A stretch of DNA of 63,855 nt, filler included, from Octopus bimaculoides (Eukaryota), in the NCBI RefSeq assembly GCF_001194135.2. It is 4 parts of 4 records of this genome, joined end to end, with 100 filler letters (N's around TTAATTAATTAA, not from the genome) between each part and the next. Parts side by side here need not be neighbours in the genome. Positions count along the whole stretch, not along the records: positions 43,750 to 61,644 come from NC_068984.1; 3 more parts are not named here. The stretch is one strand, 5' to 3'. The notes beneath the pieces are model-generated. The model worked only from the letters and a program-made list of their open reading frames with translations, had not been told where the DNA came from and ran no database searches. A program made the position numbers and the translations under genes. Positions 54,365 through 55,020 of the stretch are shown here, one piece after another. Position 1 is the first letter of the stretch. Every line of letters starts with the position of its first letter.

Positions 54365-54631
54365 AGGATGAAAAAGTCATAAAATTGGCACATGATTATA
54401 ACTGTAATGAAAATACTAGAAACATTTATTTTGTGAAGAATAAAACGGTAAATTAAAACAATAGCTAATGAAATTCCATAAAATAGATGAGGAGAGAAAG
54501 TAAGAAAGAAAATATAGTATTCCAGGGGCAAATGTGCTGCATGATACACACGATACCCTTCTCTCGTTGCAGTTAAACGACAATTGAAACCAAATGAGAA
54601 AAAGACTCTCAGACTTTGTGACAAAACTTAC

Positions 54632-54695
54632 CTCTGACTTGACCTTCGAATACAAGAAGCAGTTCCTTTTCCTTTTTAGCCTTGCGATCAGCCAT
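54632..54695 (-). CDS. SRGAP: First coding exon of a SLIT-ROBO Rho GTPase-activating protein (srGAP, F-BAR N-terminus)
   Basis: Minus strand ATG GCT GAT CGC AAG GCT AAA AAG GAA AAG GAA CTG CTT CTT GTA TTC GAA GGT CAA GTC AGA G|gtaagt = MADRKAKKEKELLLVFEGQVR+1 nt. It aligns with vertebrate srGAP N-termini (e.g. MTSPAKFKKDKEIIAEYDTQVK|EIR), whose first intron is also phase 1 at this position (recalled, not searched). The donor is a perfect consensus. Confidence 0.8.
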
Positions 54696-55020
54696 CGTAA
54701 AATAATCCTGACTGATAGTCCGAAGTAGTAGTAAAAATTTTTAGTACCAAAGTGAACACCGGTCGCCTTAACGCGCTTTCCTACTCTATACTACTGTATC
54801 TTAAAAAGGAGCACTTCACTTGCTGCTCCTCCCGCTCTCTCTCTTTGTATGCGATCTAATTACGACTACACTAACACTCCTTTTAGATTCAGTTACACTC
54901 TCCTCATCACTCTGACTAAACTGACGCCCACTTTCTCTCTCTTTGTGTCTCTGTTTCCTTCTCTCCCTCTCCTTCCCTTTCTTGCTCTCTTTCTCTCTCG
55001 GTGGCTGTGTGTGTGTATAA
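54696..55020 (-). promoter_or_regulatory. Putative srGAP 5' UTR / proximal promoter (GA-rich on the gene strand)
   Basis: Unique sequence with several CpGs directly upstream of the ATG, followed by a CT/GA-rich tract. The TSS cannot be determined. Confidence 0.4.

What the first reader, a model, noticed from the sequence alone, without database searches (positions are those of the whole stretch)
54626..54780. 64-nt first exon of a cephalopod srGAP with vertebrate-conserved intron position and a >54 kb first intron
This is the only host coding sequence found, and it is too short for the ORF track. The peptide MADRKAKKEKELLLVFEGQVR|E parallels KKDKEIIAEYxxQ[VI]K|EIR of SRGAP1/2/3, with the same phase-1 break. 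srGAPs act in Slit-Robo signalling and spine development. A very large, TE-filled first intron in a neural gene is a natural place for regulatory innovation. Such a short exon is easily missed by annotation.
Basis: partly seen in the sequence, partly recalled or inferred. Interest (0 to 1): 0.75.

Follow-up and report, generated by a model that had tools for sequence, protein, structure and literature searches.

The report
First coding exon of an srGAP gene
This short stretch is very probably the genuine first protein-coding exon of an ordinary, widely conserved animal gene (an srGAP, a Slit-Robo Rho GTPase-activating protein); the claimed giant 54-kb intron came from how the window was stitched together, and nothing unusual remains.

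Summary
On the minus strand an ATG at 54695 opens 21 codons (MADRKAKKEKELLLVFEGQVR) plus one base (G), ending at 54632 before a gtaagt donor.

The shape alone means little: the piece has 11 similar ATG-ORF-into-donor arrangements. The match to human SRGAP2 alone is also chance-level (20 bits, E 4.5).

A profile of the exon-1 peptide from 24 objectively chosen srGAP-family proteins picks out this ORF:
- It scores E 1.2e-5 in the piece, against E 2.4 for the next best hit.
- The alignment runs end to end.
- None of 20,000 shuffles reaches its score.

The intron position and phase were checked in real genes. Carp, a rotifer and another invertebrate all split the Asp/Glu codon G|AN directly before 'IR', as here.

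The exon also lies in a 3.4-kb domain where CpG is not depleted (o/e 0.84, against 0.31 and 0.14 in the flanks), which fits a promoter.

Not supported:
- The '>54 kb intron': only ≥10.9 kb lies in this piece, and exon 2 is absent from it.
- 'Cephalopod': not testable here.
- 'First exon': the transcription start is unknown.

The F-BAR, RhoGAP and SH3 exons lie outside the piece. This is an ordinary gene part of low interest.

The parts
54632..54695 (-). Coding part of the exon: an ATG plus 20 further codons plus 1 base (G), encoding MADRKAKKEKELLLVFEGQVR. The final G is the first base of a split Asp/Glu codon.
   Evidence: Read directly. srGAP exon-1 profile hit at E 1.2e-5, against E 2.4 for the next best in the piece. 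The alignment is end to end, HMM positions 2-22 to peptide 1-21, at 22.1 bits, with 0 of 20,000 shuffles as high. The best end-anchored matches are 11/21 identities to P0131, and 10/21 each to P0276 and to Tachypleus P0271.
54626..54631 (-). 5' splice donor gtaagt (context GAG|GTAAGT), phase 1.
   Evidence: The same intron position and phase occur in carp L004 and rotifer L006. The matching acceptor is seen in invertebrate L003.
54741..54743 (-). In-frame TAA stop, 15 codons upstream of the ATG, which fixes this ATG as the start of the frame.
54696..54780 (-). Presumed 5'UTR, or the sequence directly upstream of the start codon. It contains no ATG. The transcription start is not determined.
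   Evidence: Sequence read. This is inference only; there is no transcript evidence.
43750..54625 (-). The part of intron 1 held in this piece; together with the donor hexamer it makes 10,882 nt. It is rich in transposon remnants and microsatellites and contains no exon 2.
   Evidence: The exon-2 profile finds nothing (best E 8.3), while the positive control L003 scores 3e-26. tblastn with human SRGAP2 finds no exon 2. The intron holds an RVT_1 reverse transcriptase at 49278-50336, a Pif1 2B domain at 52966-53208, and tandem repeats.
53750..57149 (.). A CpG-non-depleted domain around the exon, resembling a promoter or CpG island, bracketed by CpG-depleted transposon DNA.
   Evidence: CpG observed/expected is 0.84 here, against 0.31 to the left (43750-53749) and 0.14 to the right (57150-61644).

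Best explanation
This is the first protein-coding exon of an srGAP-family gene (F-BAR, RhoGAP and SH3 domains; a Slit-Robo Rho GTPase-activating protein) transcribed on the minus strand.

Shown:
- Translation can start at the ATG at 54695.
- The exon contributes the 21 residues that precede the Pfam FCH/F-BAR region, plus the first base (G) of an Asp/Glu codon.
- The GAG|GTAAGT donor at 54632/54631 sits at the ancient phase-1 intron that srGAP genes share across bilaterians.

Inferred:
- The donor is spliced to an exon 2 that should begin 'AY/AR ATH CGN ...' (D/E-I-R-x-Q-L...).
- That exon lies more than 10.9 kb downstream on the minus strand, beyond the left edge of the piece.
- The exon sits in a 3.4-kb CpG-non-depleted domain that probably marks the promoter.
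- The flanking DNA and the intron are decayed LINE, Helitron and hAT-like remnants and microsatellites.
- Expression, the transcription start, the link to downstream F-BAR/RhoGAP/SH3 exons, and the source organism are all untested.
For: (1) Profile test. An HMM was built from the 22 columns equivalent to human exon 1. It used 24 family representatives chosen only because HMMER aligned them to human SRGAP2 from residue 10 or earlier.
- The HMM hits fragment 54740-54612(-) at E 1.2e-5. The next best of 1111 fragments is E 2.4.
- The alignment covers the whole peptide and ends exactly at the last full codon before the donor.
- 0 of 20,000 shuffles reach its score. In a leave-one-out test it outscores 16 of 24 true members.

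(2) Invertebrate N-termini are closer than vertebrate ones:
- P0131: MAERRSKKEKEIVNEFENHHR|DIR. This is also 21 residues and 11 are identical.
- Tachypleus: ...RKEKDTLFVFENQVR|DIR.
- A tick-like Logan protein: ...RELLLLFDGQVK|DIR.

(3) Intron position and phase were read from genomic DNA:
- Carp: 'aaa g|gtatgc' ... 'cag|ag atc cgt'.
- Rotifer: 'aaa g|gtatgt' ... 'tag|ac ata cgt'.
- A P0131-like genome: 'cag|ac atc cgg'.
- All 72 family N-termini with the anchor have D or E at this codon, so they need the G that the candidate supplies.
- Alternative-first-exon isoforms of Tachypleus and Antedon switch exactly at this point.

(4) Context:
- CpG o/e is 0.84 around the exon, against 0.31 and 0.14 in the flanks.
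- The start codon has A at -3 and G at +4, follows an in-frame stop, and has no upstream ATG within 85 nt.

(5) The sequence after the donor does not continue the srGAP reading frame (GKFCHKV*). So this is not a processed retrocopy.
Against: - No transcript or splice-junction evidence exists.
- No exon 2 or any other srGAP exon is in the piece, so the exon cannot be tied to an F-BAR/RhoGAP gene body.
A strict look-elsewhere correction therefore weakens the purely peptide-based statistic: about 2^-21 per anchored comparison, times thousands of families, times tens of exon-like ORFs, gives an order of 0.1. The exact intron position and phase are part of the same anchored comparison, so they are not fully independent. 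The CpG domain is independent.
- No protein with this exact N-terminus was retrieved. That search seems to have been restricted to proteins of about 73 aa or fewer, so it is uninformative.
- A degenerate-codon scan of JGI metagenome contigs found nothing.
- The -3 position of the donor is G rather than the preferred A/C.
Confidence: 0.85

Rival explanations
1. It is a real homologue of srGAP exon 1 but not part of a working gene. It would be a stranded duplicate or relic of the gene's 5' end (a segmental or partial duplication) that is no longer spliced to an srGAP body.
For: - No downstream srGAP exon lies within 10.9 kb.
- The surroundings are full of decayed mobile elements and assembly gaps.
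- Partial 5' duplications of srGAP genes are known in humans (SRGAP2B/C; general knowledge, not tested here).
Against: - The ORF, start context, split-codon base and donor are all intact.
- The peptide scores as well as the best invertebrate members.
- CpG is not depleted around it, as expected for an active, unmethylated promoter rather than a dead copy.
- First introns of more than 10 kb are ordinary for this gene: 16 kb in carp and more than 2 kb in L003.
Confidence: 0.08
2. It is a chance open reading frame that happens to run into a GTAAGT and to resemble a lysine/glutamate-rich N-terminus. There is no gene.
For: - Eleven comparable ATG-ORF-into-donor arrangements occur in the piece.
- Similarity to human SRGAP2 alone is at chance level (E 4.5).
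Against: - The profile E-value is 1.2e-5, with a 16-bit gap to the next hit.
- 0 of 20,000 shuffles with the same composition reach the score.
- The alignment starts at the Met and ends at the exact conserved intron site and phase.
- There is an independent CpG-island-like context.
Confidence: 0.04
3. It is one of several alternative first coding exons of the srGAP gene, or the second exon after a non-coding leader exon, rather than 'the' first exon.
For: - Tachypleus and Antedon srGAP genes have isoforms with different first coding exons joined at the same point.
- A plausible acceptor (ctcctttttaag|atacag) lies about 100 nt upstream of the ATG.
- Promoter-like motifs (two CACGTG and one CCAAT) lie about 1.1 kb upstream at 55810-55900, next to a gap.
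Against: Nothing here speaks against it. It is compatible with the main explanation and changes only the exon numbering. No transcript data were available.
Confidence: 0.3

Closest known systems
Vertebrate SRGAP1/2/3 exon 1 (human SRGAP2 M1-K22; carp SRGAP3-like, GCA_001270105.1 LHQP01000299.1)
   Same: - Both have an N-terminal peptide of 21-22 residues with the K-K-[DE]-K-E-[IL]-[IL]-x-x-[FY]-[DE]-x-Q-V-[KR] pattern.
- The coding part is 64-67 nt.
- A phase-1 intron splits the Asp/Glu codon before 'IR'.
- The peptide lies just before the Pfam FCH domain, which starts at about residue 30.
- It is part of the crystallised F-BARx construct 5I6J/5I6R/5I7D.
   Different: - Only 8-10 of 21 residues are identical.
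- The pairwise match to human is not significant on its own.
- The candidate has LLLVF where vertebrates have IIAEY.
Invertebrate srGAP orthologues: P0131 (Logan transcript, 1180 aa, FCH+RhoGAP+SH3), Tachypleus tridentatus XP_076369728.1 (P0271), tick-like P0276, Trichuris muris A0A5S6R1P1 (P0151)
   Same: - These are the closest peptides, with 10-11 of 21 identical. P0131 and P0151 have the same 21-residue length before D-I-R.
- The same phase-1 acceptor is seen in a P0131-like genome (L003) and in the rotifer Didymodactylos (L006).
   Different: - None is near-identical, so none comes from the same or a closely related species.
- The P0131-like genomic loci have G+C-rich codons and share no DNA with the window.
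Human-specific SRGAP2B/C partial 5' duplications
   Same: They are copies of the srGAP 5' end carrying exon 1 that exist apart from the full gene. That is conceptually similar to the 'stranded duplicate' rival.
   Different: There is no evidence here of more than one copy or of truncation. This comparison rests on general knowledge and was not tested.

Membership tests
srGAP family (SRGAP1/2/3, ARHGAP4 and invertebrate orthologues) | A conserved N-terminal exon-1 peptide ([KR]K[DE]KE..x[FY][DE]xQV[KR]) immediately before [DE]IRxQL | tested here: met
   Profile HMM E 1.2e-5 in the piece. The peptide scores 22.1 bits end to end, which is higher than 16 of 24 true members in the leave-one-out test.
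srGAP family (SRGAP1/2/3, ARHGAP4 and invertebrate orthologues) | A phase-1 intron splitting the Asp/Glu codon (G|AN) after the exon-1 peptide | tested here: met
   The candidate reads 'aga g|gtaagt'. The same site and phase occur in carp, rotifer and the L003 invertebrate.
srGAP family (SRGAP1/2/3, ARHGAP4 and invertebrate orthologues) | An F-BAR (FCH, PF00611) domain encoded from exon 2 onward | tested here: inconclusive
   No exon 2 or F-BAR coding sequence is in the piece. It would lie beyond the left edge, so its absence neither supports nor refutes membership.
srGAP family (SRGAP1/2/3, ARHGAP4 and invertebrate orthologues) | RhoGAP (PF00620) and SH3 domains downstream | not testable with these tools
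   These domains are present in the reference members P0131 and P0005.
srGAP family (SRGAP1/2/3, ARHGAP4 and invertebrate orthologues) | The exon is transcribed and spliced into an srGAP mRNA | not testable with these tools
   No RNA-seq data are available. The protein-database search for the N-terminus was probably limited to very short proteins. The metagenome scan was empty.
   No eukaryotic genome collection could be searched by DNA. The look-up of a window ORF returned nothing. The retrieved srGAP loci are unrelated at the DNA level.

The most novel reading that the evidence does not exclude
The exon could be a lineage-specific extra copy, or an unannotated alternative first exon, of an srGAP gene. 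It would be separated from the gene body by a very large transposon-filled intron, or detached from it altogether. That would make it an invertebrate parallel to the human SRGAP2B/C partial duplications, or a case where current gene models start at exon 2.
Probability: 0.07. Interest if true: 0.4.

Novelty: new member of a known kind. Interest (0 to 1): 0.12.

Why it matters
It matters little beyond correct annotation. The result shows that a 64-nt coding exon, invisible to ORF-based scans, can be recognised from three things: a family-specific exon profile, the conserved intron phase, and a local CpG signature. It also anchors the 5' end and probable promoter of an srGAP gene in this scaffold. 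The intron 1 position of srGAP genes is shown here to be shared by a fish, a rotifer and other invertebrates, which is expected for an ancient bilaterian gene. The features that made the finding look exciting, a >54-kb first intron and regulatory innovation, are not supported by the data.

Tried and rejected
(1) PDB sequence search with the 21-mer found no hit; the query is too short.

Padded with X it returned 'no candidate'. I do not count this as evidence of absence. Searches indicate that the tool returns only proteins up to about 1.75 times the query length: the maximum was 840 aa for a 480-aa query and 569 aa for a 328-aa query, and P0131 itself was missing. A 42-aa query would therefore see only tiny proteins.

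(3) tblastn of human SRGAP2 against the piece gave a chance-level exon-1 match and no other exon.

(4) The search with human SRGAP2 returned only mammals. The chimeric query (window peptide plus P0131 residues 22-328) returned no mollusc or cephalopod protein.

(5) I tried to identify the organism in four ways:
- An exact look-up of the 352-aa RT ORF was not on record.
- blastn of the piece against the retrieved srGAP loci L001-L003 gave only one 36-nt repeat match. blastn of L005 against the piece gave none.
- The literature search 'srGAP + octopus' found nothing relevant.
- Rfam found no family.

(6) A degenerate-codon scan for KKEKELLLVFEGQVR in JGI metagenome contigs gave 0 hits.

(7) The look-up of Gambusia SRGAP3 isoform X5 failed because only the longest isoform of a gene is indexed.

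(8) A processed retrocopy is rejected because homology stops at the donor.

(9) Pfam scans of 26 distinct other ORFs in the piece found only transposon-type domains (RVT_1, PHD, Pif1 2B) and no second host gene.

Full report
**Scope.** Only 43750-61644 of the window is genome. The rest is filler from joining unrelated pieces. The piece holds 740 N in four gaps: 51263-72, 53272-371, 53657-779 and 55949-56455.

**1. The observation.** These features are on the minus strand.
- An ATG lies at 54695-54693, with A at -3 and G at +4. It is followed by 20 more codons and one extra base: ATG GCT GAT CGC AAG GCT AAA AAG GAA AAG GAA CTG CTT CTT GTA TTC GAA GGT CAA GTC AGA G. This is 64 nt ending at 54632.
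- The intron-like sequence gtaagt follows at 54631-54626.
- The peptide is MADRKAKKEKELLLVFEGQVR.
- An in-frame TAA at 54743-54741 closes the frame 15 codons upstream. No other ATG lies in 54696-54780.
- Read through the donor, the frame gives GKFCHKV and then a stop.

**2. Is it more than chance?**

Taken alone, the exon-like shape is not. The piece has 20 GTRAGT sites on its two strands. Eleven ATG-initiated open frames of at least 15 codons run into one of them.

tblastn of human SRGAP2 aligns K6-K22 to 54683-54633 at only 20 bits, E 4.5. That ranks sixth among obviously random hits. My recalled human sequence was 100% identical to database entries.

I therefore collected the family without reference to the candidate.
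- An exhaustive HMMER search with a human SRGAP2 protein against 1.84 billion cluster representatives returned 150 srGAP-family proteins from across animals.
- I took the 24 whose HMMER alignment to human SRGAP2 began at residue 10 or earlier and aligned their N-termini. The core has no gaps.
- I cut out the 22 columns equivalent to human M1-K22 and built a profile.

Results of the profile test:
- Against all 1111 six-frame fragments of the piece (31,619 residues), the profile hits fragment 54740-54612(-) at 21.4 bits, E 1.2e-5. The next best fragment scores 4.9 bits, E 2.4.
- The alignment is end to end. Profile positions 2-22 match peptide residues 1-21. It starts at the Met and ends at the last complete codon before the donor.
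- None of 20,000 shuffles of the peptide (Met fixed, same composition) reaches its 22.1 bits. The maximum is 17.5 and the 99.9th percentile is 10.2. The lysine/glutamate richness does not explain the score.
- In a leave-one-out test, true members score 3.0-38.8 bits with a median of 16.6. The candidate beats 16 of 24.

The closest individual sequences are invertebrate:
- P0131, a 1180-aa transcript-derived protein with FCH, RhoGAP and SH3 domains: MAERRSKKEKEIVNEFENHHR|DIR. It shares 11 of 21 residues and has the same 21-residue length.
- A tick-like protein: ...KRERELLLLFDGQVK|DIR.
- Tachypleus tridentatus srGAP1-like X1: ...RKEKDTLFVFENQVR|DIR.
- Trichuris: MERKTPKKEKTNLQEFEGSVK|DIR.

A caveat on statistics. 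A strict look-elsewhere correction therefore brings the purely peptide-based expectation to the order of 0.1. That figure is about 2^-21 per anchored comparison, times thousands of families, times tens of exon-like ORFs. The CpG evidence in section 4 is independent of this. Together with the top-of-range score among true invertebrate members, it makes chance unlikely. I give chance about 4%.

**3. Intron position and phase.** I read these from genomic DNA of real srGAP genes.

| Gene | End of exon 1 | Start of exon 2 | Split codon |
|---|---|---|---|
| Carp SRGAP3-like (L004) | caa gtg aaa g\|gtatgc | cctcag\|ag atc cgt aat cag | G\|AG = Glu |
| Rotifer *Didymodactylos carnosus* (L006) | atc gtc aaa g\|gtatgt | cttag\|ac ata cgt tat cag | G\|AC = Asp |
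| P0131-like invertebrate (L003) | not on the contig | tttcag\|ac atc cgg cag cag | needs a G from exon 1 |
| Candidate | caa gtc aga g\|gtaagt | outside the piece | G\|.. |

- All are phase 1. In carp, exon 2 starts 16 kb downstream of exon 1.
- All 72 family N-termini that carry the anchor have D (27) or E (45) at this codon.
- Alternative-first-exon isoforms of Tachypleus (MACWNPRLEVDWM|DIRQH) and of Antedon switch exactly here.
- Several truncated gene models begin 'IRxQL', as expected if exon 2 starts with two bases of a split codon.

**4. Context.**
- CpG observed/expected is 0.84 over 53750-57149. It is 0.31 over 43750-53749 and 0.14 over 57150-61644. The exon thus sits in a 3.4-kb island of non-depleted CpG inside strongly CpG-depleted DNA. 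In a genome that methylates its repeats, that is what an unmethylated promoter region looks like. This is inference; methylation was not measured.
- A polypurine (GA-rich) tract lies upstream of the ATG at about 54820-55010.
- A roughly 320-nt palindromic element lies at 55370-55691, flanked by (TGTA)n.
- Just before the 507-N gap there are two CACGTG motifs and a CCAAT box at 55810-55900.
- The transcription start is unknown. A possible acceptor (ctcctttttaag) near 54800 means a non-coding leader exon cannot be excluded.

The rest of the piece is decayed mobile DNA:
- Three diverged copies (68-81% identity) of one LINE-like element lie on the plus strand at about 49169-50795, 57194-57697 and 59100-60755. 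One has an RVT_1 ORF and one has a PHD finger.
- A Pif1-helicase 2B fragment typical of Helitrons lies at 52966-53208(-).
- hAT-like ORFs lie at 46592-48076 (only a weak zinc-finger hit).
- A 66-nt tandem repeat and many TA/TGTA/CT microsatellites are present.
- Pfam scans of 26 distinct ORFs found no second host gene. Rfam found nothing.

**5. What is not there.**
- A profile of the exon-2 region finds nothing in the piece (best E 8.3), while it finds the control exon in L003 at 3e-26. Intron 1 therefore spans at least 43750-54631, which is 10,882 nt including 233 N.
- The '>54 kb' figure counted unrelated joined pieces and must be dropped.
- F-BAR, RhoGAP and SH3 exons cannot be examined, so full family membership of the gene is inferred, not shown.

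**6. Mechanism.** In reference members the Pfam FCH domain starts at residue 30-32. Residues 1-22 are part of the crystallised SRGAP2 F-BARx construct, PDB 5I6J/5I6R/5I7D. The exon thus supplies the start codon and the short conserved N-terminal segment that leads into the F-BAR domain. The phase-1 donor hands over a G that completes an Asp/Glu codon in exon 2. The function of the protein (membrane-curvature sensing, Rac/Cdc42 GAP activity, Robo binding) follows from family knowledge, not from this piece.

**7. Rivals.**
- A stranded or duplicated 5' relic: about 8%. This is disfavoured by the intact ORF, the intact donor and the CpG island.
- Pure chance: about 4%.
- An alternative or second exon rather than 'the' first exon. 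This is compatible with the main reading and is left open.
- A retrocopy is excluded because homology stops at the donor.

**8. Limits.**
- The source organism could not be identified. No eukaryotic genome collection is searchable by DNA here, and the retrieved srGAP loci have different base composition and share no DNA with the window. A window ORF look-up also returned nothing.
- The search meant to show whether any known protein has this N-terminus is uninformative. The tool appears to list only proteins up to about 1.75 times the query length.
- A degenerate scan of metagenome contigs found nothing.

**9. Verdict.** It is an ordinary part of an ordinary conserved gene. The elements that raised its interest (giant first intron, regulatory innovation, cephalopod neural evolution) are unsupported or untestable here. 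Interest 0.12; a new member of a known kind.

Noticed in passing
window 53750-57149: A 3.4-kb domain with CpG observed/expected of 0.84, embedded in DNA with 0.14-0.31. It looks like an unmethylated promoter island in a genome that otherwise shows strong CpG depletion.
   Followed up: partly
window 55370-55691: A nearly perfect ~320-nt palindrome. Its outer arms are 70 nt and 90% complementary, and it has nested inner arms. It is flanked on both sides by (TGTA)n/(TACA)n microsatellites, about 0.7 kb upstream of the start codon. It may be a MITE or foldback element.
   Followed up: partly
window 55810-55900 (minus strand): Two CACGTG E-boxes and a CCAAT box (gattgg) lie within 90 nt, in a CpG-containing stretch directly next to the 507-N assembly gap (55949-56455). 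This could be the real core promoter or an upstream leader exon region.
   Followed up: no
window 49169-50795, 57194-57697, 59100-60755 (plus strand): Three diverged copies (68-81% identity) of one LINE-like retroelement, with an RVT_1 ORF at 49278-50336 and a PHD finger at 57456-57734. All are antisense to the srGAP exon, with one in the intron and two upstream.
   Followed up: partly
window 52966-53208 (minus strand): An 80-aa ORF with a clear Pif1 helicase 2B domain (E 8.4e-11), most likely a Helitron fragment inside the intron.
   Followed up: no
window 51280-51459: A 66-nt tandem repeat (2.7 copies, 79% matches) abutting a 10-N gap, immediately 3' of the intronic LINE copy.
   Followed up: no
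window 54820-55010 (minus strand) and 58293-58420: A GA-rich polypurine tract lies directly upstream of the exon, and a long (CT)n array lies further upstream. The first could be a GAGA-type promoter element or just low-complexity DNA.
   Followed up: no
L003 12397-13037 and L001 9122-9658 (unrelated invertebrate srGAP loci): The exon encoding QKQQKYSENKLK... is preceded by several tandem, degenerate partial copies of its own 5' part. This is a local tandem duplication of an exon fragment inside the intron, seen in two different assemblies.
   Followed up: no
tool behaviour: the search for homologous proteins listed no protein longer than about 1.75 times the query (840 aa for 480 aa; 569 aa for 328 aa, with the 1180-aa source of the query absent). 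Negative results with short queries therefore say nothing about full-length proteins.
   Followed up: partly
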